A stretch of DNA of 64,000 nt from Ostrea edulis. Lineage: Eukaryota. A model generated the notes under the pieces. That model ran no database searches. It was not told the DNA's origin and saw only the letters and a list, made by a program, of their open reading frames with translations. Of the stretch, positions 6,938-39,838 are shown in pieces; position 1 is the first letter of the stretch, and every line of letters starts with the position of its first letter. The stretch covers positions 48,856,001-48,920,000 of the forward strand of contig NC_079171.1 in NCBI RefSeq assembly GCF_947568905.1. Reading direction: 5' to 3'. The translations under genes and the position numbers were made by a program.

Positions 6938-7021
<84 letters not shown>

Positions 7022-8086: not shown

Positions 8087-8123
<37 letters not shown>

Positions 8124-8425
8124 CACTAAAGTTCCAACAACACCCGATACTTCAAACGTATTACTACATGTTTTTTGGATCAGCTCTTTGGTCGAATAAA
8201 GCCTGTCCTAATTCGCTCCTCTTTTATCATTGATTGGCAAGCCCAAAGACCAAAACACATGTAGTCTGCGTTTTAAATACCTTTGTAGATTAGTGTAGTT
8301 GTAGTGCTAGATGTATTTATATGTAGTTTTTGATATTATACTCTGTTGATATTGGCCACATTATGTAATTCTTTTCGTTTGTCCTGAAGATGGGACAGGA
8401 CGTCCCGAAAATTTGACAAACTGGT

Positions 8426-8484
<59 letters not shown>

Positions 8485-19916: not shown

Positions 19917-19945
19917 ATGGATTCCAGTGTCTACCAATCGTCAAG
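19917..19945 (+). CDS. Gene B exon 1, coding part (MDSSVYQSS-S)
   Basis: tgttcag| acceptor at 19904, ATG at 19917, AG|gtattg donor; phase 2 fits exon 2. Confidence 0.55.
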
Positions 19946-22900
19946 GTATTGTAAACATTGCTATGATATAACATAATATTCAGTAGGCACTTATACTTTG
20001 TCTGTACAACGTTTCGTATCATCATTGATGATAGGTTTCGAAATATTGTTGTTTGTTCCTTTTTTTCTTTTTAAAAAGATCTTTATCGTTTGAAAAGACG
20101 GTAACCATGGCCCATAGACATACACTACTTATAGAAACCTGATAATGCACTTTGAAATATGGATTTGTTTAAAATAGCTTTTGTCTGAACATGAAACATT
20201 TTTGAAACTTGAAAATAATTCATTAAAATGAAATTGCAGGAGTAGTAGTTATATGAAATGTATACTGGAGAATCTAGTATTCATTTAATTTATGGGTTAT
20301 TCTTGGATTTTATTTGGACTTCGAAGTTCAGATTTATCAGGAATCTCAATTTGATCTAGTCATGAACGTTTGAGGTGCATACCTTAATGCAATGATATTA
20401 CTATGGAAACAAAAGACCATAATTCAATGACACTAAATTGATGCTACAAGGCTGAATACCTTTTTCATTCAGCTAGTCCAGTTTTCCCAGCAATATCCAT
20501 TTAAAGATACTGTTGTCGTGTAATTTGTGTGTAACCAATATGAATATAAACTGATGACGTCATAAGTATACATCGAGCGACACATATAAAAAAGAAATTA
20601 ACAGTGCCATGTAAATATCGACAAAATGTGGATGTTTGAAATATATTTCATGATGAAACACCGAGAATGTATTGATATTATGAAGGTATGTTGCTTTTAT
20701 TCATTGACAATTTTGTTTACGAAAAAACATTTGATTTACCATGTCCATCCGATTTTCCTCTGTCAAACACTGAATTAAAAAAATCTTTAAAAGTAAGAAC
20801 CTACATTGGGTGTTTAACCTAATCATATATATCTATATATATCCTATGTCAATATCTATTTGTTTCTTTTTTCAACAGCGTACCTGAATTGGAACCTACA
20901 GAATATGACTTTATGGTTGGCGAAGAGTTCAAAATTGTAATCATAGGTGAAAATCTCTTTGATTCAAAACTTATTTCTTATCATAAATTAAAACTTTCAA
21001 ACAAAACATTTTTCTATATTAAATGTAATAATTGGAGTGTAAATCACTTTTAAAATTTGAAGTTTTGTATCGATCGATTTCTTTATTTATTTAAAGTGCC
21101 AATACAGTACACATGTCTATAATCAATAAATCTGTAAAATTGTCCAGTTTAAGGACGGCTAATTTGAATCGTGACTTTGAGACTATAATGTAGTTTCATT
21201 TAAGATTGAGTAGAAGTACTAGCACTAGAAATTACACCAAATATACCCTCATTGTTAATAGTAGTGTTATCAAATACCATTTCCACTTCTAATTTATCAT
21301 TTTAATTAGGTCCAACAAAATCTGGGAAGACATCATTCATTAACAAATTAGTACAGTTTCCATTGTACAAACCTGGTCTGTTGTGTGCAACGACTTCAGT
21401 CATTAAAACCCATTGCTGGAAGGAGGACGGTATTGAGATTGTAAACAATAACAAAAGAACAAGTCACAAAAAATTATTTACCTCTAGAAAAGCGTTACAG
21501 GATTTCATGGATTCACACAGCGATGAAATCCATTTATCATTCTCTGTAGATGTTTATATCAAAACTGAAAGGAGACAGGTTTGTATAATATATTTCTCCA
21601 TAATTTGATTGTAGGGATTGATTGTTGAAATTCAATATCCAAAACTATATGATTTTTATTTCATATAAGTTTTTGGAATTCAAAGTGGAGTCGGTACCGT
21701 AAAGGTGTTTCAATCCGGAAGCATGTTCTGTGAAAGGTGCATTATCATTTTTAAATCGAGGTACGATACTGATAAATAAATTTGTTGTTACAGAACTTCA
21801 TGTGTTTTCGGAATAAATTATTGTAAACAAAATATTACATTATCTCCATGTACTCTCAGATTGATTAATTGATTGTTTTACGTCCCATCAAGAAATGTTC
21901 ACTCATATTGACACGTCACCAGCTGTATGTACATGTACACACAATTAGACTCATGCTTAGCGCTCAGGGTCGCAATCGTGAGTGTTCTTTATCGTGCCAA
22001 CGCCTACCTCGACACGAGAACTTCGCTTTAAGGTCATATCCGAAAGACCCATTATTCTCACATCTAAATGCCAAACGTTAAGCGAAGGGATATTCGTTCT
22101 TATTTTGACGTTCTAGGTATGTTGCAGCCATGGCACAAGCGGGGCGAAAACTCACGACCTTCTGCTTACGAAGTAAACGCTCTACCACTGAGCTACCGCG
22201 ACAAGTTTGTACTCTTAGATTACCACGTGTTATAAAGTGGTGTGATCTTACATATCAAAAGAAATATAAGGCCCATAACTCTGTACAAACCCAGATGTAT
22301 ACTAAGAGAAAACATAACGGTATGAAATGATTCTTGCACTGAATGGTTTGCACGATACATTGAACGATTAGCATGGAACGCTTCGCACGGAATGCCAACC
22401 ACTTTTATGTGTAACTTGCACGCTTTGTGATCGATCTGTACAAATGACACTCTTCGAGATGTTCGGCATTATTCGGTTCTAGGGTAGTTCAAACACAAAC
22501 TAATTTCAATGCAATGAAAATATTTTTGATATTAGAAAAGATTAAGAAAGAATGGTGACGATAACGAACAATGATCAATCTCATAACTCCTACAATGTAT
22601 AAGCAATATAAAATAGCTAATTGGACAGAGACGGACTCCTGGGTACACCAGAGGTGGGATCAGGTGCCTAGAAGGAGTAAGCATTCCCTGTCAACAGGTC
22701 AAACCGATCATGCCTGACGTGGTAAAATCAACCCCTTTTATTCATCAATAACTATACGAAAACAAATCATTGAATAAATCTAAATTTTCATTTTTACTTC
22801 TTAGCTCAATGATATGAACACGTTGTGATAATAAAAACAAGATTTTTTTAAACATCACAAATAAAAGAAAAAAAGATGTGATTTTCTATTGTGGAATATT

Positions 22901-25900
22901 AATTATTCGACATACACTGTCAGTGATTCCTTTACTGTATTAAATTCATTCAAACTGGAAATGAATTACAGTAGTCATGTCTGTTTCGCTATTCTTGCAC
23001 ATTCCATCTCTGTCCGTGATAGAAGACGTAAAAGGATGCCCCGTGTTAAGGATCACAATCCCCTTGGTATGCAAGGAATCAATTTCTAGATTTTTGAAAC
23101 AAAATGTATACTCACTGGGGCCGTCTTGAAAACTCGAAAACACTTACAGCCAAACACATTTTCCACCGTAAAATAGCGGAAATATTGCAAGACGGTGTTA
23201 AGCCATAATCAATCAATCTAAATGTCGTTAAAATGCAAATTCTAGGTCTCTATTCAAATACAGATATCAAACAGCCTATTCTTTCTTATATACATTTATA
23301 ACAACCGATTAAACAATTAAAAAGACTTCTCGTTAGGCAAGAATAAAACATATTCTCGGTCGTGGGAAGGGTGCATCTAGGCATGGCTGTTAATTTCAAA
23401 TACCCGAATTGTCTGACATATATTGTAGTAAAACGCATCTTTGAATCCGCATAGAATATACAAGTTATACACAGATCGGTGTTTGCTTTATCCCAACATT
23501 TGCGATAAACAAATTTGATGATAATAGCTTTATTAAAAAAAAACCACGTGATCAAACACACATAACAAGACATATTATTCATACATACAAAAGAAGAAAA
23601 AAAAACAACTACCGAGAACGGAGATGTATCAAGTTTCCCTGAAAATCAATAGCGTCTCCCTCGTCTTAATCCTAGCATATGTTACCACACCAGTGCCAAA
23701 TTTTCCCAAAATAATTTCAAGTTACTGTTTGTCATTACAAACAAATTATCATCGTGTTGATATCAAAACACTTTAAAATCCCCGACTCAGTAACGACGAA
23801 ACCGATTGGATCTTTCTTGGGCTAATCAAAGTATCATGGATACCATTGATGAAAATCCATCCAAGTTTTCACGTGTCGTAAGAAGTGCTACGGGCGGCCA
23901 AATGAACGGACATAATGTTTATTAAACGGTATCCACCATATGTCGGGATCCTTATGACGACATAATTTGACATCAAATATTGCTTCCTTTAGAGATAACC
24001 GCTGCGATGGTCTAGGGTAGAGCGTTCGCCCCGCAAGCGGAAGGTCAGGGTTTGAATCTAGGCCGCGACATAATTTAGTCGCTAAAACAGGTAGTGACAG
24101 TTCCATCGGCAAACGCTCAGAATCAGGTGTCAATTTCACGGATCCTCGGAGATGACCTTAAAAACGGATGTCCCGTGTCCTAGTATTTGTGACACGCTAA
24201 AGAACCCTCCCTGCTCAATGGCCATAAGAGTCGAACATAGGCCAAAATTTGAAACCTTTCGCCGGTATTTATGACGTCTTCACATGAGTGAACAATTCTC
24301 GAGAGGGACATTAAACAAGATACAATTAATACCTTAGAGGAAATATAACACTACATGCATCATCAATTCGGATCCAGCGCAAAATATACCTTAGTCTACC
24401 AAAGCACAACATATTTGAGATAAGAAAAGCATGACTTTAAATCCAACGTGTAATTGCTTTGTAAATATCATTACTTAAGTAGCGAATAAAATATTTCACA
24501 TATGTTATTAAAATACACTGATTTACATCATTTACTTTAAGCTTGTTAGGCCTTTCTTTGCATTATGAATGCATACTGACTACGAGTTTATCTGACCATG
24601 ATGCATAACTAAATGCGGGTGTGGCCTGTCATTAGGTAAAGCGTACAAACCCCTATATATAGGTCATTGTTCGTAATCTTCACTTGTTCGTTGAACAAAG
24701 TCATCATGTATAAACTATGTAGCACTAATTTCAAATTAGATGCTAGTCCACTTTATCTTTGTCAAACATTTCCTCAAGCGTGTTTTTATGCTTGATTCTT
24801 TTAGCATAAATTAGAATTCTGCAGCCCGACGTGACAAGTTGCCCTCGGATCATTATTTATAAGTCTGGTTTAAAAAGACATTTTGTTTCGTTGATTTCCA
24901 GTGTTATTGAAACACCTATATGGGACATTAGTGTAAACGTACCTACCTAGATGTATTGATTTTTCGTAACCAATTATGTATTTCAACTAATATTTTGTGT
25001 ACAGGAAACATAATAACGATTTTCTATAGTAAAGTTTACCAAGAAGTCATTTACAATTGTTTCTTATAATACCTTTATCAAAGATATATAGCGTAAACTG
25101 TGTACATATAATTTATCATCAATATATACAGATTGATTTTCCTACTTTTTAAAGATGGGATGCGTTTTCATTGAAATTCCGGAGAACCTTATTAAGACGG
25201 AATGGGAACCAGGTTTCTCAACAGATGTTTTGATAGTGTTTGCTAGCATTACTGATAGCTTGATAACACAACCAGAAACGGTAAGTAGACATATCTGTAT
25301 TTGGTAGTGACTGTAGTCAGGACATTATTAGTGCTGCGACTTAGTATTATATCAAAAATAATTCTTAGATCTATAGATTGTTATCAACATGTCATCAAGA
25401 GTTAGAGTTCTTGGACTATGATAAAGATCTAAATTTTGAAACAACTTCACACTTTAAAAATTCGAATTGTGTCATTTTAGGCTATATGGCTATATCCGAT
25501 TTCGATGTTATCCATTTTACTATTGTCATCCTTTACTAAAATGTTGACTTTGTTCGATTACTTTATGCACAGGTAATGTTAAAGAGAAATTCATTTTGTA
25601 CAGGTATTACAGATATTTTTGTAACCTTTAATCAAGGGCTAATATAGATATACAAATGTTCATTGCAGTGTCAATAGTACGTCAAACCGTTTCAAATTTT
25701 TATTTATATGCATATTCATAATATATGTATCCAAAATGAATAGATCAATACATGTACATGCAATTCAATAATTAAGAAAAATTAAGAATTGTCATTTCAA
25801 AGCTGGTAATAGTTATTTTCAATAAACATGATTTGGCTTGCGATTAAACCTGATAAAGGGATACCCGCATTGTTTCAGTATTATGGTGACTTATCATGAT

Positions 25901-28900
25901 GGTACTCCTAAAGTTACCCATTCCATACACATACATTAAAAAGGCATTGGAGACACATACCAAACTTGAAAAAAAGGATGTCAAGGAAGCCACTGTCACC
26001 TGATACGGGGACCTATAGTGGGGATTTCCGTGTCCTCACTCCCATATACTAGTACATATACACCACTACTCTAGCACTTCCTACCTTCTTTCGAAAATCG
26101 CATCACGTTGCTTAGAATTCTAACAAGTAATTAAGTTTAATTTTCCAACATTTCACCATTTTGAAACAGGTGAAATTCATATTAGTGTAAGGGTTATGCA
26201 TTCTTAAATCAGATCTCATAATTTGGCATTTTGTTTACTTCGAAACCCAATATTGACAAAAACTTCACACTGCACGATTTTTTGGTATCATCAACCGTAA
26301 CATTGTCGTTACTTGCGTATTCATTGATTAGATTGAAGATGAATAATCCCTTTTCACATAATTTCGCCTTCAGTGGGATGAAATCCATTCACAATGTCGA
26401 TGAAAGTAAATTTGCGGTTCGCACCAAAATAAAAGTATGCTCTGTCAGGTTGTGATGAACTGGTATTACGTCAGTAAACTTTTCACGCTTCTGAACTGTA
26501 GAACGCTCCACCTTTGTACAACTTTAAGATACTATGTCGAATTCTATGCCATATTCTTCTTCCATCTCGACCAACCGTAATGTTGGCCTACAAAGTTCGA
26601 AATAATGGTGATAATGGAATATTGCTACATAAATATGGGAAGTTGACAATGGAGAAGCTGAAATCATCCCGTTTGTCATAAAGTTGAGTTGTCAGTTTGC
26701 CGTTAATGTCTACTTTCAATAAAATATCTCATATTAATCTGATCCATTGACTGGGATATCAAATGTGTCTAAAACTGAAGCATGGTTTTGAAGAATGTCG
26801 TCTTTTGAAAGGGCAGTTAAAGTAAAAGTACGATTACCAAAAGTGGAAGTAATGCCAAGTTCAATGAAGGTGTTTGTGAAGTTTCGGAAACCAATATTGG
26901 TAACTCATATTCATTCCTACTGTTGGTATATAATGTGGATAAGTTTGGAGAATTTCATCACCTGAAAAGGGATTTGAAATTTGTATAAGGAGGATTCCCA
27001 AAAGTGGAATGTATGCCAAATTTGTTTGAAATAGAGTTGTAATAATGATTATATGAAAAAAGAATATTGCATGAAAATATGAATTTTGCTTTCTGTAACA
27101 TTTTACAGATGAAATGCACGTTATCAGTCTATCATGAGAAACTAGTATTTGATACAACTAAGACATACTTTGTCACAAACAAATGGGATACCCTTAATGG
27201 TGACGAGGATAATGTTCTACATGAAGAGGATAACATTAAACCTCTTTTCGAATCTTCGGTGAAAAATGTCTGGCCAGTACCAATCAAGAAAGACCACTTT
27301 TTTTGTATCAGTTTACGGCGGGTATGTTGCATATACTTTCTTTTAATTTATTTACAACGATTAATAATTACAAATGCACGCATATCTAAATGTTCTAAAT
27401 TAATATACTAATAACTGTTTTCAATAATAGACTTCCAGATTCAGCAAGGGGCTAGACATGTTGATAGAGGACGTTGAGAATACTGCAACAAAATACTTTC
27501 AGTAAATCATTATTCATCATTTAATCTTAAAGTGTTGTATATTCTAAATCGTTATACCTATTGCAAATTAACTGTATGTATGTTTCATTTGTTATATGAT
27601 CATGCTGTTTTTTTTTCGTGTTTTTCAGCTTTACAGCAGACGACGCGATCGAGAAAACCATATCGCTCACTCAACAATTATTGAAGCTTCTACAGATGGA
27701 GGAATTTCCAGGGCGTTTAAAAGATGAGCTTTCAAACTCTTCTCCAAAATTGTTGGAAAATCTCAAGACAAAAGGCGAGGAGCTGAAAACAATTGAATGG
27801 TTTATAGTTGTAGCAGGTAAAAAAAAATCCTTAAATGACTTCTGTTTCCCTTAATTGGTTATCATATTTCTGTATCGAGATATATATGTTGGAATCAATG
27901 TGGTTTTAAACAATGGTTTTATAGTATCTGAACAAAATCATCTATGTTAAACAGTTTCGATTAAAATGTAAAATGCATTTGTAGATCTGCTATTTTGTCA
28001 CTAATATTTACAATAATGATGAAGAAAACATTACTTTCGTTATTTCCTCTTTTTCATCTTTAGTTTGATTGGTGGTTAATTTAAAACTAAATCTATATTT
28101 CATTCAAACAGTTCTGAAATCATGTTCCTAGCAAAAAAGGTCCTTAAGTATCTTAGTGCTAAACTATAGAGAAAAAGCCATCAAAATATTCGAGTAATAT
28201 TGATTGCCGTTAAAATATTACAGTCAATCAAAGATAACAACCAACTCGTGATTGATAACCGTGACCTTTTTTCTTTACAAGTATACAAAGAATGATGTCG
28301 TGTTTTTGACTATGACATATTTTGAAGGGAAAAAAGTGAAATAAGATGAAAGGTGGAGATAAAGAACAGTGACCAATCTCATAATTCCCATAAGCAATAC
28401 AAAATAGATAGTTGGGCAATCATTTCTATAATAATAATAATATCCTTTATTTATACAGGATTGCACAATTTGTTGTATAAACTAGTTTACATTGTGGTCC
28501 TTTCTATTTCTGCTAGGAACTGCTAATTCTATATGCATCACATTTATTTGTAATAATAAAACGTTAACTGTTTTACCAGACATGAGGAAAGGACATATTT
28601 TTCTGACCTTAGTGTGATTTCGCTGTACGTTGTAATTAATACTTTTTGAGATATACACGATCTGTATTACTGCGTTTTATTTATACTCGTATACGGTCCT
28701 TATCGGTATCTAACTTCTGCTTTCTTTCAGGTGACACAAGCGCTGGAAAAACAACATTAATAAATCGATTAGTTGGGCATCATATTTTGGTTCCAAGAAC
28801 ACTTGCATCGACAGCAGCTGTGTGTAGAATTCGAAAATCAGAAAAAATGCAAATCAATCTCTACAACAAAGAAAACGAATTGCTGGAAAGAAAGGGCTTT

Positions 28901-31900
28901 AAGGATGTCTCATCATTGCATGATGCTCTTCGAAACTACACAGAACTGGATAAAAAGAAGAAAGTCAACGACAGAAACATACATTTTGTCGATATCAACC
29001 TGCCTTCGGAAACGTTGCAGGTAATTATTTTGCATGGTGACGAAAATATACTACTACTTACAGTACCTGTAATAAACTACTACTTTCATACTTATAAACC
29101 GCCGCATTGGTCTAGAGGTAGAGCGTTTGCCCCGCAAGCGGAAGGTCGGGATTCGAATCCCGGCCGCGACAGACCTAAGTCGTTAAAATAAGTAGTGACA
29201 GATCCATCGCCAAACGCTCGGCTGTCACGGGTCTTCAGATATGACCTTGTCAATGTAAACAAGGCTCAGTACTATTTTAGAATATGTGTATTAAAATGTT
29301 GGATTAACCAATTACATTTTTATTATAAAGCCAATACATAGTCTATTATAAAATCTGCGTAAATTCCAGAGAATGTTAGTGTTCAATATCCTGAGAATTT
29401 ATTGAACGCTAACTTTGCATTGCGTAAATTGTGTGTGCCCAAAACATTCCAAATATGAGCATTCAATATTGACCTTACCGTACATAACGATGTAAACAAG
29501 CCAAGATGGCAGACGACAGTCCTCCGAATCTGACAGAGCCGGTATTTGAAATCATATTCATTTACTTAAACAAAATGTTTTACTGTACATAAATTATGAT
29601 GTTCCCATTCACAAAATCAGTTTGCTTCATGCATTAATGACGGGTTTAATATTGAACAGTTAAGAAACACATGCTGATATTGCACACTTTAACCTTTGGT
29701 GTCAATATTGATGTATTCTCGTCTATTTTGGAGTATTTTGAGTGAAAAGGGATATAATTTAACAACTAAATACTCACAAGCTCGTGCATTTTCACAGCCA
29801 ACTTGCCAATATTCACCAATATAAGTTAAATAACCCTATAATATTGGCATTATTATTACATATTTATGATTATATCAGCGACAGGAACATTTCATTTGTA
29901 CACATTTATAGAAAAGAAGATTTCGTGTACAACTGTGCATCATAGCTGGCCTACTACATCTTTTTTGGCCCGGTTGCTGTCTGCATTTCAATGACTCGAA
30001 CTGGATTTGTTCATGAACTGATATTATTTAGAATGTAACTATCAGTACAGTTTACCATTGTGGTTCCAAAAACAATATCAAGTACATTAAGTTGTGATTC
30101 ATTTTCTTATATCACTGTACAATATTCGTTGCTATGTGCTATGACGATACGCCTGTGCTCAAACGTCAAAAAAAAAAAATGGCCAACGGCCAGATTGAAA
30201 CAGGCACAGTTACTTCTTTTAAAGATAATCTATCTCTAGTTTACTGATTTTTGTGGCCGATGCATGTGGCCACATGGGGTTTTCTCCTAAAAGGTAGAAA
30301 AAGGTAAGAAAATCGTCCATTTTCCGGATTCTGGATAGGTTTGCATAGTACTCAACATTACAAGAGACCTAGATCCGCCAATATGTTTGTATATATACAT
30401 ACTAAGGATCATCAACTTCGTATATATCAATGGTTTGTACTAATAATCATTAGTAAAGTATTTTCATGGCCTAGTTATGATAACAAACGTACCTAGTTCA
30501 TTGTGACGTTATCTACAGAAAATCATCACATTATTAAAAATATTTCATTAATACCATTCAACAAAACAGCTGAAAATGAAGTTTCCAGTCATATTATGTA
30601 CAGTTTCCACCCATCTACTTGCAGAACCGCACAGTACTTGTGGATACTCCTGGCATTGGACACGATCATATATTGGATGATGTTCTTTTGGATTACCTTC
30701 CCAATGCGTCGTCCTTCATTTTTCTGGTCGATGCAGCAAACGCAGGAGGAACACATGAGGACAGAGTAAGTATTTTCTAATTAGAACTATCGCCATTTTG
30801 CAAATACTCTGAGCGTTATAATGATCTTGTTTTAAAATGAAAGCTGTCGTGAAGTTAAGTGATAGCTGACATGTTTCATCCTAATTGTCAGGATGTTTGT
30901 GTTTTGTTTATCTTCACCTTTTCATATATCAGTTTAAGATTACGAATTTAAAGTTCTGTAATTCTGTAATTAAGTTATATGTATGCATGCCTTTAACATA
31001 ATTTTCATGTTTCTGTGACTGATCAATATATATGTAAACAAAATTGCAAGGGACAATAATTCATGTGCTAGTACTTTCTCTATTATATGTTAATCATACA
31101 ATGACATCTCTAATATTTACATTTATTGTAGAGTTTATATAGTGGTGAATTTTAACTAGCCATTTTAACAAGTTTTTATGTATTTTGATCATGTAGAACC
31201 AGGCTCTGGTTTATGATCCTTTCCTTTAAACGTCCTTTTCTTTCAACCTAGTTGATGAAAATTATGAGAGTCGTGGTGGAAAAACAAGAGAAAATGCCAT
31301 ATTTCAACTTAAAAGATGTACTGTTTTTGACAAACAAATGGGACAGCGTGGAAAGCGACAGCGACAGTTCTGAAGATGAAGCAGAGGGGGAAGGAGAAAA
31401 TAATCAGAAAACAAGGATGTATGATTTTATCATAGGGTCATTATCACGGGAATGGCCTGCTGTGTCGAAAGATACTGTTTTTCAAGTATGTTTGAAAAAG
31501 GTAGGTTTGTCATAAAAATTGAAAGTTTTCTGCATAATTCAACTGAAAATGTTAAAAATCTATTAGACGCGTTTTTTTGTTATAAATCTGACGGAAAATG
31601 TGGTAGACATATTTACTACTGTGAATCATGTTTGCATCATCTCTTCGATTTTTCCCAATAGAACCATAGTTTTCATTTTAGATCAAATAACAAAATAAAT
31701 GGTCATACACTATAATGTATCATAACAAGTTATTTCAAATAACTTGTAACTTTCCTACAAAGATCCAATGTTAGGTATCATAATCAATTATTAAAACAGT
31801 GATATCTCAATATTTGTAGGATGAAAGTGAATATAAGTCTGAGTTCAAGCGTTTCCAAAGAAAATTCATCGAAGTACTGGAGAAAAACAAGTCTGTTAGG

Positions 31901-34900
31901 ATGTGTGATGACTTCAGGTAGACACCTGTTTTTTAATGAGCTTGTCAATCTGTTGTTTCTTTAACTAACACATTTGTCAGTAAGTCAATATATAAGATGA
32001 TTTTGTATAATTTTTTAATTAATCGAAGTATCGCTAGGTTTTTATTTTATTTTTATTAGCATAACACGTTTTGTCAAAGTAGCAAAAAGTAAAACACTTG
32101 AAAAGTAAGATAACAAGCAGTCAGCAATCTCATAATTAACTTCTACGTAAAAAGAAAAATATATTTTGCCATGGCCTTCAATTCGACATTTAGATATATC
32201 GACGACGTGTTATTTATTAACAATAATAATTTTCATTCATATGTCGATTCCGTATATCCAAGTGAACTCTAAATAAAAGAAACCACAGAGTCGTTCACTT
32301 GTGCTTCATACTTAGATATTTTCTTGAAAGTAGATTTGAACGGCAAAGTGACAACTCAACTTTATGACAAACGGGATGATTTCAGCTTCTCCATCATCAA
32401 CTTCTCATATTTATGGAGCAATATTCCATTATCACCTGCATATGGTGTTTATAACTTTCAACTGATTCGATACACAAGAGGTTGTTCTGCGTATAGCAGT
32501 TTATAAATTGAGGCAGGCTACTGACAAATAAGTTGATGGCACATGGATTTCAACAGTCTCGTTTAAAGTCAGCATTTCGCAAATTTTAAACCAACGCGGT
32601 GGTCTAGAGATTAGAACGTTCGTCCCGCATGCGGAAGGCCGGGGTGCGTATCTCGGCCACAACAGACCAAAGTCGTTAAAACAGGTAGTGCCATTCCATC
32701 GCCAAACGCTGGACATTAGATGTAAATGTTATGAAAAGGACCTTAAAATGGATGTTCCATGTCACAGTAGGTTTGGAGCACTAAAGAACTCTCACTGCAC
32801 AATGGCGGTAAGCGCCGAGCACAGATCTAAATTTGAAGCCCTTCACCGGTCATAATGACGTCTCCATATGAGTGAAAAAAGAGGTGTTAAACAAAATACA
32901 GTCGGTCAATCAATCGCAATTTTATGGTCGTTACAACCTATCATTATGTCAAAGCTGTCTGACGTATTTCATACCGATTGTTAGACCGTTCTTGGCACTC
33001 TGATTTTGACTACGGATAACTCCGCAAGATTGAGGGTATTACCGGTCGACAGGGGATGCTTATTCCTCCTACATATCTGATATACTATCTGGTGTTTCCA
33101 GAGGTCCGTGTTTGCTAGAATATCTATTTTGTATTGCTTGTAGGAGTTATGAGATTGATCACTGTTCGTCATCTTCACCTCTCCTAAAGGAATACACAAT
33201 AAACATAGTGCGAATTGTTGTCTGTCCTTTAAATGTAGGCTTTTACATCTTGGTTGTGTATTTTTTATGCGATTTAGGCCTCTGCTGGTGGACTGTTAGT
33301 CCCCGAGGGTCTCTACAGCCCAGTAGCTAAGTACTTCGTTACTAGCTTGAAAATACGGATGTATATTTAATTGCTGTTATAAAATTTAGAAATTCATTTC
33401 AAAATTAAGGATTATCTCCCTCATGCATAGCTCTTATCCTTGGACGAATTTGGCTCCACTTTTTTGGCACGCTGTTTTTGGCTATATTTAGCTCTAAAAC
33501 TTCATTGATATTCCGGATTTCAAAGATTTCGGTTGAGCATCACTGAAGAGACATTATTTGTCGAAATGCGCATCTGGTGTATCAAAATTGGTACCGTATA
33601 AGTTTTAAATCCAAAGTGTTTCGTTTCGTTCCGTGCAAACCATTTACCGTTCCGTGCAGACCGTTCAGCGTTTCGTGGAAACCGTTCACCGTTCGGTGCA
33701 AATCGTTTCGTGCAAGAATCGTTCCATGCATGATTAAGCCATGCTCCAAGAATTGTGCCGATCGTTCCAACCATGCCCTTAGAAACGTATATACCGTGAA
33801 AATCATTTCGGCATGGGTGCACTGAACGAAACGAAACGCTTTGGAGGTGAAATAGCACGCTTCAGGGTGTGTAGCTGTTATGTCAGTGATCCTCAATAAA
33901 CTTGTAAGAACTAAAAAGACAGTGTCAATGACTGGAGTCAAATTCGTTTAAGGATCAGATATATGCATGAGGGAGATAATCCTTAATTTTCAAATTAATT
34001 TCAAATTTTTATCACATCAATTAAATATACATCCGTATTTTCAAGCTAGTATTTAAGTTAGCTATTTGGCTGCAGAGACCCTCGGGAACTAACAATCCAC
34101 CAGCAGAGGCCTTGACCTAGGGGTCGTAATGTAAAACTTATACGGTACCAATTTTGATGCAACAGATGCGCATTTCGACAAATAGTCTCTTCAGTGAAGC
34201 TCAAGCCAAAATATTGGAAATGCATAATATCATTAATCCCGATTCATTATATTTATTTCATTAGATTCGTCTGGGAAGCATTTACCAACATTGAAAGAGT
34301 AGTATGTGCAAGACTTGATATGCAGAGAAAAGGCGAGAAACAACCAGAGAGGAGAAACGTCTCTCCTGAATTCCAAACAAAGTTCTCAGAGGTACAGTGT
34401 ATAACCTCCGTAACTTTTATTTCGGTGGTAGAAGGGTATTCACATCACAACCGAGAGTCATGGGCTTCAATTCCAGTGGGCGTATCAATTCAAAGATATA
34501 GTTTTATAATATGCCTTCGTGAGCAATATGGTGGGTATATATTTTTGACTGGTTTGTCTGGTTGGCTGTCAGAAACTTGATCCATGGTGTGGCTTTTGAT
34601 CATTCCTTGCGACAAGATATTTGTGATCCCCAAACTCCGTGACCTTGAATTTTCACATACTTTTAAAAATTCCAACATATATATTACACGTATCTCCTGA
34701 ACTATTTAGGTAGGACTTTCAAATGTTGTGGCATCGACGTTTGACCTAGTTTTAAGAAAGAAAAGAACATTGGTAATATTCTCTCAACTGTTTAAGGTAG
34801 GGCTTTAATTTCATCCTAACATTGGAGTTTAACTCAAATTTCTTTTAAGCAACCCTGAATCTTTTTTGTTTTGTTTTACAAAAATAAATTCTTCTTTTTA

Positions 34901-37900
34901 TCATTCTTTATTACCACCCGGAGTATAGTATTTCCAAAACACATCTTTGTTTGTAATTTTGTATTTTTACCATCCGAAAATTTTGTATTTGTTTAGAGAT
35001 GTTATTAGCTATCGTTGAAGTTGTAATATGCAAAGGCGGATCCAGTAACGACACATCGGGAGTAGGTCCCAATTTTTATATCACGTTGATCACTCAGGTG
35101 ACCTATTGATATCGCTTTGTTTCCACCGCCGTGTCGTCATCCGTCGTGCATTAAAAACTGAATATTTTAACTACTAAATGATTAGCATTCCAATTATTTT
35201 CGTATTTGGTATGACGCATTTTTTTTTTAGCGGGGGGGGGGGGGGGGTGTTGTTGTCTGAATTGAAAAAAAAATACAGTATATTCCCCCGTGGATTTGGA
35301 GTATTGCTAAAACTGCCACAATTTCAAACATTTTCAGAGACATTTTCTGTTCATCTAGATAAACTGATTTTGACTACGGATGATGTTGATATACTTGAAA
35401 ATGAGGACCTCAAATTAGCTATTCGAAAAGGTTTAATATACGATAATATACAGAGAAAATCGGTCTTTCAACTGAAGGCAGAACCTCATCTCTATAATAA
35501 ATTCTGTCAAAGATTATGCCAAACGATGGGCTATATATGAAAAAGAAGAACTTGATACAGAATGGATTAAAAGTGTTAGAGGAATATTAAAATCCCTCAT
35601 TAGGAAGAGCAAAACAAAAGTACGCAGCAATGAACCTTCTGTTTTAGTAAACCAGAAGTGATAAAATAATTAAATAGGTCACATCAGGAATATGTTTTGG
35701 TTCCAGCTGACATTCAAAGCCTGATTGTTACAAATGTATTTTAAACGAACGTGACATTAATTCCACTTTTGGTAATCGTACTTCTGCTCCAACTGCCCCT
35801 TCAAAAGACGAAATTCTTTAAAACCATGCCTCAGTTTTAAACACAATTAATATTCCAATCAATGGGTCGGATAAATATGAGTTACTGTACCTGTACTGAA
35901 TTCCTAAACTACATAAAACTCCTTTCGAACAAACATACAAAGCAGGATCCAGTAAATGTTCTACCAAGCCACTATCTTTGCTCCTCACGAAAATATTAAC
36001 AGCTGTGAAAGAGAAACTTCAAACGTACTAGAATTATCAATCAAATACTAAACTTATTGACATTATTGACAGTTACTTCTGCAACAAAATGGAAAACGGG
36101 AATATTCATATCTAGTGATCAGTCATTCAAAAATTACTTTGTTAAACACCAATTTGATTCCATGAACACAAACTATGAAGTCGACGTAAAATATCTTCGT
36201 GGTCTTTAATGATCAGGTTTTCCAACAGTCTGATGGAGTTACTATGGACACGAATTATGCTCCTTTCAGAGCAGACCTGTTTTCATATTCTTATGAAACA
36301 AAATTTATTGAAATAGTTCTACGTGAGAAGAAACTATATCTTGCTGTGCCCTTCAATGATACATTTAGATCTATTGACGACGTTTTATCTATGAACATCA
36401 ATAACGTCCATTGATATGTCTATTCGATATATCCATGTGAACTAGAAATAAAAGACGCAAGAAAGTCGTCCACTTCTGGTTCATTCTTGAATATTCTATG
36501 AACAATACATATCGACGGCAGACTAACAACTCAACTTTATGATAAACGGAAAGATTTCAGCTTCTCCATTGTCAAGTTTCAATATTGATGTAGTTGAATT
36601 CCAGATCACTTGCATATGGTGTTGATATCTCTCAACTGATTCGATACACAAAGGCTTGTTTTGCATATGATCACTATCTTAATCGAAGCAGGCCATTGAC
36701 AAAACAAGTTAATGGTGCAAGGGTTTTAGCAGTTTCTTTTAAAGTCGTTACTTCGTAAATTCCATCTAGGTTGTCAATAAAAGCTATCATTGGGTCAAAT
36801 GCTGCCTGACTTGTTTCATACTACTTGTTAGGCCGTTATTGGTACACTGATTTTGACTACGGATAACTCCGTTTACCTGATCAAGAGTTAGGGCTGACCG
36901 GTCGACATGGGATGCTTACTTCTCGTAAGGCACCAGATCCCACGTATTATATTCAGGGGTCAGTGTTTGCCCAACTCTCTAATTTGTATTGCTTTTAGGA
37001 GTGATGAGATTGATCACTGTTCGTTATGTTCACCGTTCATGTATGTCAAGGGGTCCGTGTTTGCCTTACTCTTAATGATGTATTCTTGATAGGGATTGAA
37101 AAATTGGTCATCGTTCGCTATTTTTACCTTTTGCGAAGATTTGTTTGTGCATTTGTGTGCTTATGGTCCTTCCGAAATTTACCATTCATATTAATGAAAT
37201 TTGAATTATAATCGATTAAAACGTTGAAAACATTATTTTGATCTTCGTATCTTTAAATAGAGTAAATTAGAAAACGAAATATTTTCATGAAAAAGTGAAG
37301 ATAACAAACAGTGATCGATCTTATAATTCCTTTACGGAATACAAAATAGGGATTTGGGCAAACACGGAACCCTCGATATACCAGAGGTGGGATCAGGTAC
37401 CTGAAAAAAGTAAGCATCCCCTGCCAACGGGCTACATCGATCATAAGCCCTATATCTTGATCAGGTAAATGGAGCAATCCATAGTCAAAATCAGTGGAGC
37501 TCTAAATAAGCGTAAATACTCATTAATTTTGACAAAATAAGCAATCAATTTGAAGTTCAGGCATACAATTACGCATTAGCAATATCTATCTGTTTTACGC
37601 TACTTAAGTAATGCTTACTTGTGATGGCATAAGTACGAATTATCTATTCATACCAATTTAAGTTAGCTAAGCGCTTAAACTTCCATGAAATAATCGCTAT
37701 GAGAAAAAAAACCCGTTTAGATAGCAGGCAATGACATTCTTCAAAGATGGCTTAAAGATAACTCAAAACAACTGTGTGAGCCGTCTTGTTATAATTCTTT
37801 CTTAAAGAGATAGAATGCGGTCAAAGGCTCCGAAATCATTATCAATCGTGGAGGTTTTATTGCTGCTACAAACATGGCACAGAAAATGTCACGGGGCAAA

Positions 37901-39521
37901 CGATATTTGTTCTGTAAAATTTACTTGAAAGCTTTTCACTGAAAGTCCACTCCTACAGCATTGTCTTAATAAGTATTTAAAACATTTGCGGGAATTGGGG
38001 TCATTTATTTACCGACTTCCATCATGCATATACTAGTTTTACAGAAGTGGAAAAAATCAATTCTTTGTTAATGGTAGAAAGTGTGAGGAATCCAACAGTA
38101 ACTTGCAGTAAAAACAAAGTGGAAAAATTATGTACGGACATAATTAGGTTTATTTAAGTTTTAAAACATGCTATAAGACACAGAATCTAATGATTTTGAA
38201 ACTGATAGTTTTTAGCCAAAATGCTTTTAGATTCGCATTTATAACAGTATAATTTACAATATGACAAATAGTTTTGTTCTTTGATAAGTGCTTATGAAAT
38301 GTGTTCAATACTGTACAATAAGAACTCCAATCTACGGGTGAAAATCCTTTGTAGTTTGTTTTATTATAAACTCTTCATTATCATTGGGATTTTGAAATTT
38401 ACCATGGGGGTATTAGATTATGATATGTCAAACTTATCGAATTCTGTATTGGTGACAAAACAGCAAAGAAAATCGAATGTTAGACCGTTCATGGCACACT
38501 ATTTTTTGACTACGGATAACTCTGTTTACCCGACCAAGATATAGGGCTTACAGCGGGTGAGACCGGTCGACAGGGGATGCTTATTCCTCCTAGGCACCCG
38601 GTCCCATCTCTGGTATTTCCAGGGCTCCGTGTTTGCCCAACTCTGTGTTTTGTATTGGTTATAAGAATCAGGAGCCAATCTCTCTAAGTCCCATGTATAT
38701 CTGTCTTTAATCTTTTTTTTTTTAAGTTATATAAGTCTGCACTATTCATTTTGGTATGATCGTTTCCTAGGAAAAGAAAACCTTTATCTCTTTTTCAGAT
38801 GAAAGAACAATTGCAGCTAGAGATCAAATGGGTAACATCAACTTTTGCGACAAGATGTCACAACTATCTTCAAAGCGAAAGAGGAAAAGAAGAAATTTTG
38901 CTGAAAGTGCCAAGTCGATCAGTTACCACAATCCATGCCCTAAAAAGTGAAATAGCTTCACTTTTGATGAATGCTGTTCAGCTGTGGCTAACTGGTGACC
39001 AAATGAGAACTTTGATTAGCGGTATAAACAAAAAGATTAGAAGCTACGTACACGATCTGGAGAAAGAGTTACTAAAGATGCAGCACGAAATATTTGATGT
39101 GAATACACCCTACTTTACTGGGTTAAATGATCACAATGCCAATATATCTGCAGTTTACAGAGCTCTTCTTCCTTGCACTATATCCATGGATTTGACAGAC
39201 AGGGTTATCTTGCTATTGGGTGATTCAGTTATGGAAGGTTTAAAAGAAAATATCTATGGATTTTTGCTAGACAAGCTGGATACAGATGCTATAGAAAAGT
39301 GTTTGGAAATGTCCATTCAGCGTAAATACGATAGTATCATCGAGCGAATCCACGATGCATATTTGAGAAAAGGCAAAAGCATTCAAGAGACAATGGAGAA
39401 CATAAATCTAGAGGGATCAACGATGTTACATTCATGCAAAGAACTGGCAAAGAAGCTCGGCGATATTCGAAGAAGTTACAGACCTCTTCTAATGAACATG
39501 GCACGATGGGATCGTTTGTAA
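19917..39521 (+). CDS. Gene B: tandem double-GTPase dynamin-like protein, 13 coding exons, ~863 aa. join(19917..19945,20879..20946,21310..21578,25155..25280,27109..27321,27431..27501,27629..27816,28731..29020,30625..30765,31252..31500,31820..31917,34265..34391,38799..39521)
   Basis: All introns are GT-AG; phases 2,1,0,0,0,2,1,0,0,0,2,0 give 2592 nt with no internal stop. Module 1: GPTKSGKT / ATT / EIPE / TNKWD. Module 2: GDTSAGKT / ST / DTPG / NAGG / TNKWD. Exon 1 and the start codon are the least certain parts. Confidence 0.8.
20879..20946 (+). CDS. Gene B exon 2 (VPELEPTEYDFMVGEEFKIVII-G)
   Basis: caacag| acceptor, G|gtgaaa donor; beta strand leading into the P-loop. Confidence 0.75.
21310..21578 (+). 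CDS. Gene B exon 3, module-1 P-loop (GPTKSGKTSFINKLV...CATTSVIK...ERRQ)
   Basis: attag| acceptor, CAG|gtttgt donor, Walker A motif. Confidence 0.85.
21858..22200 (-). mobile_element. SINE with a different tRNA head (GGTAGCTCAGTGGTAGAGCG) and the shared tail
   Basis: tRNA D-arm/A box on the minus strand; tail similar to 53315-53380. Confidence 0.7.
23998..24330 (+). mobile_element. tRNA-head SINE, same family as 32589-32913
   Basis: TGGTCTAGGGTAGAGCG ... GGGTTTGAATC head; shared body and tail. Confidence 0.8.
25155..25280 (+). CDS. Gene B exon 4, module-1 degenerate G3 (MGCVFIEIPENL...QPET)
   Basis: Not in the ORF track. tttaaag| acceptor, ACG|gtaagt donor; phase 0-0; occupies the position of the DTPG exon. 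Confidence 0.75.
26596..27045 (-). mobile_element. Rearranged internal Naiad-type RT debris
   Basis: Segments matching 3780-3900 and 4695-4825, then a more diverged HYYN...STFGNP...YWFPKLHK segment. Confidence 0.65.
27109..27321 (+). CDS. Gene B exon 5, module-1 G4 (MKCTL...YFVTNKWD...ISLRR)
   Basis: ttacag| acceptor, CGG|gtatgt donor, NKWD motif. Confidence 0.85.
27431..27501 (+). CDS. Gene B exon 6 (TSRFSKGLDMLIEDVENTATKYF-H)
   Basis: aatag| acceptor, CA|gtaaat donor; RFSKGLDMLI aligns with gene A RFKETLDKMI; phase 0->2. Confidence 0.7.
27629..27816 (+). CDS. Gene B exon 7, start of module 2 (FTADDAIEK...IEWFIVVA-G)
   Basis: tttttcag| acceptor, G|gtaaaa donor; phase 2->1. Confidence 0.85.
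28731..29020 (+). CDS. Gene B exon 8, module-2 P-loop (GDTSAGKTTLINRLVG...LPSETLQ)
   Basis: ctttcag| acceptor, CAG|gtaatt donor. Confidence 0.9.
29098..29248 (+). mobile_element. tRNA-head SINE, 3'-truncated
   Basis: A box TGGTCTAGAGG, B box GGATTCGAATCC. Confidence 0.8.
30625..30765 (+). CDS. Gene B exon 9, G3 (NRTVLVDTPGIG...YLPNASSFIFLVDAANAGGTHEDR)
   Basis: ttgcag| acceptor, AGA|gtaagt donor; the ORF track shows a different frame here. Confidence 0.9.
31252..31500 (+). CDS. Gene B exon 10, G4 (LMKIMR...VLFLTNKWD + acidic insert...VCLKK)
   Basis: acctag| acceptor, AAG|gtaggt donor. Confidence 0.9.
31820..31917 (+). CDS. Gene B exon 11 (DESEYKSEFKRFQRKFIEVLEKNKSVRMCDDF-R)
   Basis: tttgtag| acceptor, AG|gtagac donor; homologous to gene A exon 5. 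Confidence 0.8.
32165..33183 (+). mobile_element. Naiad-type RT C-terminus and 3' end, interrupted by a SINE
   Basis: [15 protein letters not shown]...PAYGVY; sequence resumes after the SINE at 32925. Confidence 0.8.
32589..32913 (+). mobile_element. Full-length tRNA-head SINE with (CAAT)n tail and TSD
   Basis: A-box-like TGGTCTAGAG; TSD TCGCAAATTTTA (32577-32588) / TCGCAATTTTA (32914-32924). Confidence 0.8.
33276..33606 (+). mobile_element. Retrozyme-family monomer
   Basis: Highly similar to the 8829-9447 unit, with different end points. Confidence 0.8.
33537..33580 (+). ncRNA. Minimal type-I hammerhead ribozyme (family 2, copy 3), sense strand of gene B intron 11
   Basis: GCATCA-CTGAAGA-GACATTATTTGTC-GAAA-TGCGCA-TC-TGGTGT. 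Confidence 0.85.
33610..33845. mobile_element. MITE with 28-bp TIRs and internal 21-bp-period repeats
   Basis: TCCAAAGTGTTTCGTTTCGTTCCGTGCA ... TGCACTGAACGAAACGAAACGCTTTGGA (2 mismatches); no TSD seen. Confidence 0.7.
33922..34212 (-). mobile_element. Retrozyme-family partial monomer, inverted and permuted
   Basis: Reverse complement of the same unit, starting at the hammerhead. Confidence 0.75.
34159..34200 (-). ncRNA. Hammerhead motif (family 2, copy 4), stem I partly degenerate
   Basis: Reverse strand GCTTCA-CTGAAGA-GACTATTTGTC-GAAA-TGCGCA-TC-TGTTGC; two stem I mismatches. Confidence 0.65.
34265..34391 (+). CDS. Gene B exon 12 (FVWEAFTNIERVVCARLD...TKFSE)
   Basis: cattag| acceptor, GAG|gtacag donor; 127 nt. 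Confidence 0.8.
35360..37120 (+). mobile_element. Older, degenerate copy of the same Naiad-type element
   Basis: Colinear with 3323-5195, with many stops and frameshifts (e.g. QQSDGVTMDTNYAP, FRSIDD). Confidence 0.8.
38799..39521 (+). CDS. Gene B exon 13, helical C-terminus (MKEQLQ...WDRL*)
   Basis: tttttcag| directly precedes the 240-aa ORF. Confidence 0.85.
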   Translation: MKEQLQLEIKWVTSTFATRCHNYLQSERGKEEILLKVPSRSVTTIHALKSEIASLLMNAVQLWLTGDQMRTLISGINKKIRSYVHDLEKELLKMQHEIFDVNTPYFTGLNDHNANISAVYRALLPCTISMDLTDRVILLLGDSVMEGLKENIYGFLLDKLDTDAIEKCLEMSIQRKYDSIIERIHDAYLRKGKSIQETMENINLEGSTMLHSCKELAKKLGDIRRSYRPLLMNMARWDRL

Positions 39522-39754
39522 GCATGGATAACATCTCTTTGAAAGACAGTTTATGTTACTTTGATTTTTCTTTGTACAGTTTATTCAAGATTTAGCATTC
39601 CACTGTTAGAACATCCATTCATTTTTCAATATTACATTTATAGTGGCACTGTGGCTCTATTAGATATCAGTTTAGGGAGGACTTTTAAATTGTTTTATTG
39701 TTTTCCACTTTTCATATAACCGATTATCGATCCTTTTGTGATGTGAGAAGCATT

Positions 39755-39756
<2 letters not shown>

Positions 39757-39832
<76 letters not shown>
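39757..39832. repeat. Compound microsatellite (CT)n(AT)n downstream of gene B
   Basis: Read directly. Confidence 0.95.

Positions 39833-39838
<6 letters not shown>

What the first reader, a model, noticed from the sequence alone, without database searches (positions are those of the whole stretch)
19917..39521. Animal dynamin-like gene with two GTPase modules fused in frame
Seen: 13 exons splice into one 863-aa frame with two P-loop modules (G1 at aa 33 and aa 322, each with NKWD) and a single helical tail. The intron phase series 2,[1,0,0,0,2],[1,0,0,0,2],0 repeats gene A's pattern (1,0,0,0,2,0) twice. Exons 2-6 are therefore a symmetric phase-2 cassette duplicated inside the gene. Known: animal dynamin-superfamily proteins (dynamin, Mx, GBP, mitofusin, atlastin, EHD) have one G domain and dimerise through it, whereas Bacillus subtilis DynA is a natural two-module fusion that protects against membrane stress and phage. 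Inference: this may be a convergent DynA-like covalent G-domain dimer in a mollusc. Module 1 lacks its own stalk, unlike DynA.
Basis: partly seen in the sequence, partly recalled or inferred. Interest (0 to 1): 0.85.

Follow-up and report, generated by a model that had tools for sequence, protein, structure and literature searches.

The report
Oyster dynamin-like gene, extra degenerate GTPase module
An oyster gene of a bacterial-dynamin-like family carries, just upstream and in frame, a second, badly diverged copy of its GTP-binding exons; the DNA layout is real and the extra copy has been kept as coding sequence, but no RNA data were available to show that the two halves are made as one protein.

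Summary
P-loops lie at aa 33 and 322, NKWD occurs twice, and the phases are 2,1,0,0,0,2,1,0,0,0,2,0. Gene A (minus strand) has 1,0,0,0,2,0.

The family is a bivalve group of BDLP/mitofusin-like proteins. About 45 relatives long enough to judge each have one G domain.

Module 1 (exons 2-6) has been kept as coding sequence. It has no stop in 249 codons (P about 8e-9) and coding-type codon composition. G1, the switch-I Thr and NKWD survive at about 22% identity. G3 is EIPE, so it is probably a nucleotide-binding but inactive pseudo-GTPase without a stalk.

The part of exon 7 before its first ATG encodes the family's conserved N-terminal helix. It therefore needs an upstream coding exon in phase 2, and exon 6, 127 nt away, offers that.

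The in-frame join is inherited, not selected. Relatives in Mytilus and Ostrea have the same phase-2 intron, and exon 1-to-7 and exon 6-to-12 joins are in frame too.

No RNA run or transcript-derived protein exists in the searchable data, so the fusion is plausible (about 0.55) but unproven. The DynA analogy is weak. Other notes of this scan cover this same stretch; none reports such a fusion on other DNA.

The parts
19917..19945 (+). Putative exon 1: ATG plus 29 coding nt, donor AG|gtattg, phase 2. Hypothetical.
   Evidence: Sequence only. Precedent: the O. edulis relative P0037 has a 47-nt first coding exon that ends AG|gt in phase 2 and joins the helix exon.
20879..20946 (+). Exon 2 (module 1): takes phase 2 and ends in the P-loop Gly at phase 1. 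It is the shortened counterpart of exon 7 and lacks the N-terminal helix.
21310..21578 (+). Exon 3 (module 1): G1 GPTKSGKT and the switch-I Thr.
   Evidence: Pfam Dynamin_N 21.3 bits, E 3e-4, below the cut-off on its own. Identical in DNA contigs of run X1.
25155..25280 (+). Exon 4 (module 1): G3 position reads EIPE instead of DTPG, switch II is shortened, and the AGG motif is lost.
   Evidence: Alignment. Family-invariant columns D168 T169 P170 G171 and A201 G202 G203. Contigs of X1-X3 cover it; the 1342-nt X2 and X3 contigs each carry one other letter at an unreported position.
27109..27321 (+). Exon 5 (module 1): G4 NKWD.
   Evidence: One synonymous SNP (27207) among five population contigs.
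27431..27501 (+). Exon 6 (module 1): start of the post-G 'neck' helix, donor CA|gtaaat, phase 2. Read-through gives CAG TAA.
   Evidence: Homologous to gene A exon 5 and to exon 11.
27502..27628 (+). 127-nt putative intron between the modules. It has a strong polypyrimidine tract plus cag, a 3-nt polymorphic indel in the T-run, and no ATG that reaches exon 7 in frame.
   Evidence: reading of the sequence
27629..27816 (+). Exon 7 (module 2): N-terminal helix exon, first in-frame ATG only at 27695. The 22 codons before it are homologous to the family's conserved N-terminal helix.
   Evidence: BLASTP alignments to nine relatives start at aa 261. N-termini of relatives. Phase-2 intron at nearly the same place in M. 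coruscus and O. edulis.
28731..29020 (+). Exon 8 (module 2): G1 GDTSAGKT and the switch-I Thr.
   Evidence: Pfam Dynamin_N 41.1 bits, E 2.5e-10
30625..30765 (+). Exon 9 (module 2): G3 DTPG and ANAGG.
   Evidence: Pfam Dynamin_N 20.6 bits
31252..31500 (+). Exon 10 (module 2): G4 NKWD and an acidic loop.
31820..31917 (+). Exon 11: post-G neck helix, donor AG|gtagac, phase 2.
37808..37913 (+). Exon 12: takes phase 2 and ends at phase 0.
   Evidence: counterpart of gene A exon 6
38799..39521 (+). Exon 13: 240-aa helical tail plus stop.
   Evidence: Exact ORF found in four other samples. A copy with 91% coding identity (L001) gives dN/dS 0.38.
2302..14283 (-). Gene A: head-to-head single-module paralogue, 7 coding exons, 583 aa, with its own ATG just before the N-terminal helix.

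Best explanation
Gene B is one transcription unit of a bivalve BDLP/mitofusin-like dynamin family. A block of five exons (helix exon to first neck-helix exon) was duplicated ahead of the original block. The block starts and ends in phase 2, so the copy reads through in frame. At least one mRNA isoform joins exon 6 to exon 7. It would give an ~856-aa protein with three parts in order: a divergent G-domain core, a helical linker, and a complete dynamin-like unit (N-terminal helix, active G domain, helical neck/trunk, weakly hydrophobic paddle).

Shown: the DNA layout, the homology and exon structure, the long-term coding constraint on module 1, the loss of G3 in module 1, and the BDLP-like fold of the family.

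Inferred: the upstream module keeps G1, the switch-I Thr and NKWD, so it may still bind guanine nucleotide. It lacks DxxG, a normal switch II and the AGG motif, so it probably cannot hydrolyse or switch. It would act as a built-in pseudo-GTPase partner that occupies or primes the dimerisation face of the active G domain in cis. That would gate the GTP-dependent G-G pairing that drives membrane tethering and remodelling in this superfamily.
For: All 13 exons are GT-AG and in frame.

Module 1 has the same intron positions and phases as module 2 and gene A.

Coding constraint on module 1:
- It has no stop in 249 codons, with P about 8e-9 for random sequence of that composition.
- Its codon-position composition is coding-like (G is 0.27 at position 1 and 0.13 at position 2), like module 2 and unlike the introns.
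- G1, the switch-I Thr and NKWD are retained although the domain sits on a branch of 4.3 substitutions per site.
- Only 2 of 20 SNPs in 26833-28229 fall in the 34% that is exon (p = 0.016). The one in exon 5 is synonymous.

Need for an upstream coding exon:
- Exon 7's first ATG is at aa 283, but aa 261-282 align with the conserved N-terminal helix in nine relatives.
- So a coding exon must be spliced on in phase 2, and exon 6 offers a phase-2 donor 127 nt upstream.
- Nothing in those 127 nt supplies an in-frame start.

No tail of its own: module 1 has no tail exons anywhere in the window.

Family habit: members often carry extra parts. These include a Cys-rich ectodomain plus TM segment or a coiled coil joined ahead of the helix exon, and a C-terminal kinase.

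The arrangement is present in independent samples.
Against: There is no RNA evidence at all. No RNA run holds the stretch, and no transcript-derived or annotated protein with this tail exists among 1.84 billion representatives.

The in-frame join follows automatically from inherited phases, so it is no argument in itself.

None of the ~45 family proteins long enough to judge has two G1 motifs.

Exon 1 and the transcription start are unknown.

The very long branch of module 1 could also mean relaxed constraint.

Exon 6 ends CA|gt rather than AG|gt, and several module 1 acceptors are modest (ttaattag, ttaaag, aataatag).

The cis-partner mechanism is pure inference, because no structure of the joined protein could be predicted here.
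Confidence: 0.55

Rival explanations
1. Two separate products. Exons (1)2-6 make a stand-alone, tail-less G-domain protein of ~260 aa that ends at the TAA reached by reading through the exon 6 donor (CAG TAA, 27500-27505). Exons 7-13 are a separate canonical gene translated from Met283 or from an undetected 5' exon.
For: Read-through of the exon 6 donor stops at once. A relative (M. trossulus isoform X2, P0015) starts at a Met inside the N-terminal helix. The coding constraint on module 1 is equally explained by a stand-alone protein.
Against: Only 127 nt separate exon 6 from exon 7. They hold no AATAAA or ATTAAA and leave no room for a promoter. Starting at Met283 would drop about 20 residues of a helix conserved across the family. 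The ancestral phase-2 donor of exon 6 is intact.
Confidence: 0.15
2. Skipped relic. The real mRNA joins a small 5' coding exon (for example 19917-19945) directly to exon 7, giving an ordinary single-G protein of ~607 aa. Exons 2-6 are a duplicated block stranded in the first intron. They are either recently dead or included only as noise.
For: Exon 1 to exon 7 is in frame (phase 2 to phase 2). It reproduces the layout of O. edulis P0037, which has a small phase-2 first exon followed by the helix exon. All ~45 relatives long enough to judge have one G domain. Module 1 sits on an extreme branch and has lost G3.
Against: An untranslated relic that diverged to about 22% identity would not keep 249 codons open, ten intact splice sites, coding-type codon composition and the G1/NKWD motifs. 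Polymorphism is depleted in exons.
Confidence: 0.15
3. Interchangeable G-domain blocks. Exons 2-6 or exons 7-11 are used alternatively, each joined to the shared tail exons 12-13, giving two single-G isoforms with different G domains.
For: Exon 6 to exon 12 is also phase 2 to phase 2 and in frame. Exon 6 is the counterpart of exon 11, which normally joins exon 12. Earlier notes of this scan report alternative P-loop exons in Rab genes of this genome (untested here).
Against: It would need five well-formed exons skipped as a block, and the module 1 isoform would lack the N-terminal helix of the neck bundle. I know of no precedent for mutually exclusive five-exon blocks.
Confidence: 0.07

Closest known systems
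Bivalve 'bacterial dynamin-like protein' / Dynamin_N family (for example Saccostrea LOC134260545 = P0022, Ostrea edulis LOC125662397 = P0037, Mytilus LOC134718824 = P0015); uncharacterised
   Same: Module 2 plus the tail aligns over its whole length at 28-32% identity. It shares the exon structure, including the phase-1 split of the P-loop Gly and the phase-2 intron before the helix exon, and carries the Dynamin_N domain.
   Different: Relatives have one G domain. Most have a strongly hydrophobic hairpin in the tail, whereas gene B's is weak (maximum 1.42 against 2.0-3.0) and gene A has none. Other family members carry a Cys-rich ectodomain with a TM segment or a coiled coil ahead of the helix exon, or a C-terminal kinase. 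Here the addition is a second G domain.
BDLP of Nostoc punctiforme (PDB 2j68/2j69), mitofusins and IniA
   Same: They are the best sequence match in the PDB (E 5e-10). They are also the best fold match over the full length for a model of the family member P0022 (Foldseek E 1.4e-15, 696 columns; then IniA, SynDLP and mitofusin).
   Different: Identity is only 14-17%. This is an animal lineage-specific family, not the mitofusin orthologue. Membrane activity is untested.
DynA of Bacillus subtilis (two dynamin-like units in one chain; from general knowledge)
   Same: If the two-module transcript is made, there would be two dynamin-type G domains in one polypeptide.
   Different: DynA has two complete units, each with its own stalk. 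Here module 1 is a G-domain core only, with a degenerate G3. The origin is independent: an intragenic exon-block duplication in an animal gene.
Tandem or multi-G-domain GTPases with one degenerate domain: EngA/Der, Miro, GIMAP8, mouse tandem IRGs such as Irgb2-b1 (from general knowledge, not tested here)
   Same: A covalent pairing of G domains in which one copy diverges and takes a regulatory or decoy role.
   Different: These are different GTPase families, and none is a BDLP/mitofusin-class protein.

Membership tests
Dynamin superfamily, BDLP/mitofusin-like class (module 2 + tail) | Dynamin_N-type G domain with G1 GxxxxGK[ST], switch-I Thr, G3 DxxG and G4 NKxD | tested here: met
   Pfam Dynamin_N scores 41.1 bits on exon 8 and 20.6 bits on exon 9. 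GDTSAGKT, DTPG and NKWD are present.
Dynamin superfamily, BDLP/mitofusin-like class (module 2 + tail) | N-terminal helix plus long helical neck/trunk after the G domain, with a BDLP-like overall fold | tested here: inconclusive
   Met for the relative P0022: AF2 pLDDT 79.5, and Foldseek's best hit is BDLP 2j69 at E 1.4e-15 over 696 columns. For the window's protein it is inferred only from full-length alignment at 28-32% identity. The spliced protein has no reference and could not be folded.
Dynamin superfamily, BDLP/mitofusin-like class (module 2 + tail) | Membrane-binding paddle or hydrophobic hairpin in the tail | tested here: inconclusive
   Relatives show hydropathy peaks of 2.0-3.0. Gene B reaches only 1.42 at the matching place (aa 738), and gene A has none.
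Dynamin superfamily, BDLP/mitofusin-like class (module 2 + tail) | GTP-dependent G-domain dimerisation and membrane remodelling | not testable with these tools
   Needs biochemistry.
DynA-type tandem dynamin-like protein | Two complete dynamin-like units, each with a G domain and its own stalk, in one chain | tested here: not met
   Module 1 ends 23 residues into the first neck helix and lacks the N-terminal helix. No second tail exists in the window.
DynA-type tandem dynamin-like protein | Both units expressed as a single polypeptide | not testable with these tools
   No RNA run holds the stretch, and no transcript-derived protein was found.
Pseudo-GTPase domain (module 1) | G-domain homology with at least one catalytic motif lost | tested here: met
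   Module 1 has the same exon structure as the family. Dynamin_N scores 21.3 bits on exon 3. G3 reads EIPE where the family has invariant DTPG, and the AGG motif is lost.
Pseudo-GTPase domain (module 1) | Kept under selection as protein, not a pseudogene | tested here: inconclusive
   Long-term constraint is clear: an open frame with P about 8e-9, coding-type codon composition and retained motifs. Present-day expression and between-species dN/dS could not be obtained.

The most novel reading that the evidence does not exclude
An animal BDLP/mitofusin-class protein carries a covalently attached pseudo-GTPase copy of its own G domain. This would make a built-in asymmetric G-G pair that gates GTP-driven membrane tethering. 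It would be the first tandem-G architecture in the dynamin superfamily of animals, born by duplication of a phase-symmetric five-exon block in a fast-evolving, possibly defence-related bivalve family.
Probability: 0.35. Interest if true: 0.7.

Novelty: new variant of a known kind. Interest (0 to 1): 0.5.

Why it matters
Dynamin-superfamily proteins work by pairing G domains between molecules. A natural protein with a second, inactive G domain tied on in cis would be a ready-made system for asking how G-G pairing is gated. It would also be a clean example of a new domain architecture arising from a phase-symmetric exon block.

The finding also draws attention to an undescribed bivalve family of bacterial-dynamin-like proteins. 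These have accreted ectodomains, kinases and now a G-domain copy. I found no paper on this family.

The value depends on one cheap experiment: showing that the exon 6-exon 7 junction exists in mRNA.

Tried and rejected
1. RNA evidence. The look-up of sequencing runs found only three DNA-type holders from one study. Read laying on them only confirmed the DNA of exons 3 and 4.

2. Annotated or transcript-derived protein of this gene. A phmmer search of 1.84 billion representatives with the 240-aa tail exon found only single-exon ORF fragments and one distant partial transcript.

3. Orthologous locus in another species. The only diverged copy available (L001, 86% identical overall, 91% in the coding part) is a 1.5-kb contig that covers the last exon only. 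A search with the exon 5 ORF found same-species contigs only. Between-species dN/dS for module 1 was therefore impossible.

4. Two-G relatives. The two family searches plus the representative search returned 53 proteins; of those long enough to judge (about 45), each has one G1. The N-terminal extensions of the long ones (P0046, P0044, P0025) are a Cys-rich ectodomain with a TM segment or a coiled coil, not degenerate G domains.

5. Origin of module 1 by phylogeny. Its branch is 4.3 substitutions per site and its placement is unresolved.

6. Poly(A) signals. None lies in the 127-nt gap, but none lies after the last exon either, so the test does not discriminate.

7. The ORF at 35178-35540, first taken for an exon, is transposon-derived.

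8. Folding the joined 856-aa protein or module 1. I left this out because the spliced sequence has no reference and long sequences may not be typed.

9. Literature. No paper was found on this bivalve family or on tandem-G dynamins in animals.
Full report
**What is in the sequence**

The window is AT-rich animal DNA with many transposon fragments. I did not verify that. Repeats in an Ostrea edulis locus match the window at 79-89%, whereas Saccostrea and Mytilus loci do not match at all.

The exons are:
- 19917-19945
- 20879-20946
- 21310-21578
- 25155-25280
- 27109-27321
- 27431-27501
- 27629-27816
- 28731-29020
- 30625-30765
- 31252-31500
- 31820-31917
- 37808-37913
- 38799-39521

Every border is AG/GT. 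The phases are 2,1,0,0,0,2,1,0,0,0,2,0.

Gene A lies head-to-head on the minus strand (14283-2302, 7 coding exons, 583 aa). It has phases 1,0,0,0,2,0 with introns at the same alignment positions.

An exon-like ORF at 35178-35540 is transposon-derived and not part of the gene. Its relatives lie next to a reverse-transcriptase-like ORF in an intron of gene A.

**Is the arrangement real DNA?**

Five Logan contigs from other samples of the same species (L002-L006, 98.8-99.9% identical) run colinearly through exon 5, exon 6, the 127-nt gap and exon 7. Three DNA runs carry exons 3 and 4 without change. The exact last-exon ORF is in four further samples. This is not an assembly artefact.

**What family is it?**

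Exon 8 alone scores 41 bits on Pfam Dynamin_N, and exon 3 of module 1 scores 21 bits.

Through a distant transcript-derived hit (P0010) I reached about 50 bivalve proteins of 600-720 aa. NCBI calls them 'uncharacterized', 'Dynamin N-terminal domain-containing' or 'bacterial dynamin-like protein'. Module 2 plus the tail aligns with them end to end at 28-32% identity.

One member, P0022 from Saccostrea, matches BDLP best in the PDB by sequence (E 5e-10). An AlphaFold2 model of it (pLDDT 79.5) matches BDLP 2j69 best by fold over its whole length (E 1.4e-15). IniA, SynDLP and the mitofusins follow.

Most members have a strongly hydrophobic hairpin in the tail. Gene B's is weak and gene A has none.

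The family is modular. Some members carry a signal peptide, a Cys-rich ectodomain and a TM segment ahead of the dynamin-like unit. Others carry a coiled coil there, and others a C-terminal protein kinase. Every relative long enough to judge has a single G1 motif. I found no paper on the family.

**Module 1**

Exons 2-6 have exactly the family's intron positions and phases, so they derive from this family and not from another GTPase.

The domain is extremely diverged. It shares about 22% identity with anything, and its terminal branch is 4.3 substitutions per site against 1.2-1.45 for module 2 and gene A. Its placement in the tree is unresolved.

Even so, several signs show it was translated for most of its history:
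- It has no stop in 249 codons, where random sequence of its composition would manage this with P about 8e-9.
- Its codon-position composition is coding-like and matches module 2, not the introns.
- It keeps GPTKSGKT, the switch-I Thr and NKWD.
- Among five population contigs, only 2 of 20 SNPs fall in the 34% of the stretch that is exon (p = 0.016). The single one in module 1 is synonymous.

No disabling lesion is visible. At the same time, G3 reads EIPE where 17 of 17 aligned relatives have DTPG. Switch II is 7 residues shorter, and the invariant AGG motif and several invariant Arg residues are gone. Module 1 also lacks the N-terminal helix and everything after the first 23 residues of the neck helix. 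It is best described as a G-domain core that may still bind guanine nucleotide but probably cannot hydrolyse or switch.

**The junction**

Exon 7's first in-frame ATG is at aa 283. BLASTP alignments to nine relatives nevertheless start at aa 261. Residues 261-282 align without gaps to the conserved N-terminal helix of the family, for example AIEK against AVEK in Mytilus coruscus.

Gene A and Saccostrea P0022 place their ATG just before this helix in the same exon. Gene B has a polypyrimidine tract plus cag acceptor there instead. No ATG in the 127 nt upstream reaches exon 7 in frame: the one in the right frame, at 27576, hits TGA at 27597.

The helix part of exon 7 therefore needs a coding exon spliced on in phase 2. 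Exon 6, 127 nt upstream, offers a phase-2 donor (CA|gtaaat).

This phase is a family habit. The M. coruscus gene for P0046 has AG|gt ... ag|T at nearly the same place. The O. edulis gene for P0037 has a 47-nt first coding exon ending AG|gt that joins the helix exon. The donor after the first neck-helix exon is also phase 2 in gene A, module 1 and module 2.

Two consequences follow:
- A duplicated block running from the helix exon to the neck-helix exon is automatically in frame. This explains the origin neatly, but the open frame across 27501/27629 is then no evidence of selection for a fusion.
- Exon 1 to exon 7 (an ordinary single-G protein) and exon 6 to exon 12 (module 1 on the shared tail) are in frame as well.

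**Weighing the readings**

For a two-module mRNA:
- Module 1 has been kept as protein.
- It has no tail, no visible terminator and no room for a promoter before exon 7.
- Exon 7 needs just the kind of donor that exon 6 supplies.
- If transcription starts upstream of exon 2, five well-formed exons lie in the pre-mRNA.

Against it:
- No RNA run holds the stretch.
- No transcript-derived or annotated protein with this tail exists in the searchable collections.
- No relative shows the layout.
- The 5' end is unknown.
- The long branch could reflect decay.

I put the two-module isoform at about 0.55, a stand-alone tail-less module 1 plus a separate gene at 0.15, a skipped relic at 0.15, and alternative G-domain blocks at 0.07.

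**Mechanism (inferred)**

BDLP-class proteins pair G domains in a GTP-dependent way and swing their helical neck and trunk to tether or remodel membranes; this is general knowledge of the family. In gene B, a pseudo-G domain would be tied to the neck through about 45 helical residues: the stub of its own neck helix, followed directly by module 2's N-terminal helix. It would then sit next to the active G domain. The simplest role is a cis partner that occupies or primes the dimer face and so gates activity.

The comparison with DynA is loose, because DynA joins two complete units. Tandem GTPases with one degenerate domain, such as Der, Miro, GIMAP8 and the mouse tandem IRGs, are the better functional analogy. 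That comparison is from memory and was not tested here.

**Other evidence**

A diverged copy of the last exon from another sample (L001) is 91% identical in the coding part and 82-83% in the flanks. It gives dN/dS 0.38, so the tail is under moderate constraint.

**Verdict**

The object is a new variant of a known kind: a dynamin-like gene with an extra, degenerate G-domain cassette. It is of moderate interest, and a single RT-PCR or one long-read transcriptome would decide it.

Noticed in passing
window 19945, 27501, 31917 (donors) and 20879, 27629, 37808 (acceptors): All three donors give phase 2 and all three acceptors take phase 2. Full inclusion, skipping of exons 2-6, and exon 6 to exon 12 are therefore all in frame. 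The locus could in principle yield three protein architectures.
   Followed up: partly
P0046 / L007 (Mytilus coruscus), P0025: Some family members look like receptors: a signal peptide, a Cys-rich ectodomain of about 200 aa and one TM segment, followed by the complete dynamin-like unit. Pfam finds no domain in the ectodomain.
   Followed up: partly
P0051-P0054 (Saccostrea, Ruditapes, Mytilus): Other members of ~1020-1070 aa carry a protein kinase domain; in P0051, the one scanned, it replaces the usual C-terminal tail.
   Followed up: partly
window 38799-39521 and 2302-3015 (tails of gene B and gene A): The hydrophobic hairpin that most relatives have in the tail (hydropathy 2.0-3.0) is weak in gene B (1.42) and absent in gene A. 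These two paralogues may not insert into membranes as the others would.
   Followed up: partly
L001 (sample ERR13868512) against window 38668-40119: A copy of the last exon and its flanks that is 86% identical, found in one sample only. The coding part is 91% identical with dN/dS 0.38. It could be a paralogue, a very divergent haplotype or a sister species; which one is unresolved.
   Followed up: partly
window 22450-22850, 24050-24450, 26450-26850 (and similar ORFs at about 1825-1983, 37271-37465, 38526-38678, 43960-44259): A short interspersed repeat of enormous copy number (summed contig depth in the millions in the DNA runs). It encodes a recurring '...[26 protein letters not shown]...' ORF and lies in several introns of both genes.
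   Followed up: no
window 3548-5202 (minus strand), 35178-36411 (+ strand): Retroelement fragments with a weak RVT_1 match (E 1e-5) sit in the large introns of gene A and gene B. The piece at 35178-35540 mimics an exon.
   Followed up: partly
window 18320-18453: A 134-N gap lies in the 5.6-kb spacer between the divergent starts of gene A and gene B. I left it untouched.
   Followed up: no
window 27608-27610: A 3-nt polymorphic indel lies in the T-run of the polypyrimidine tract before exon 7. It might alter acceptor strength between alleles.
   Followed up: no
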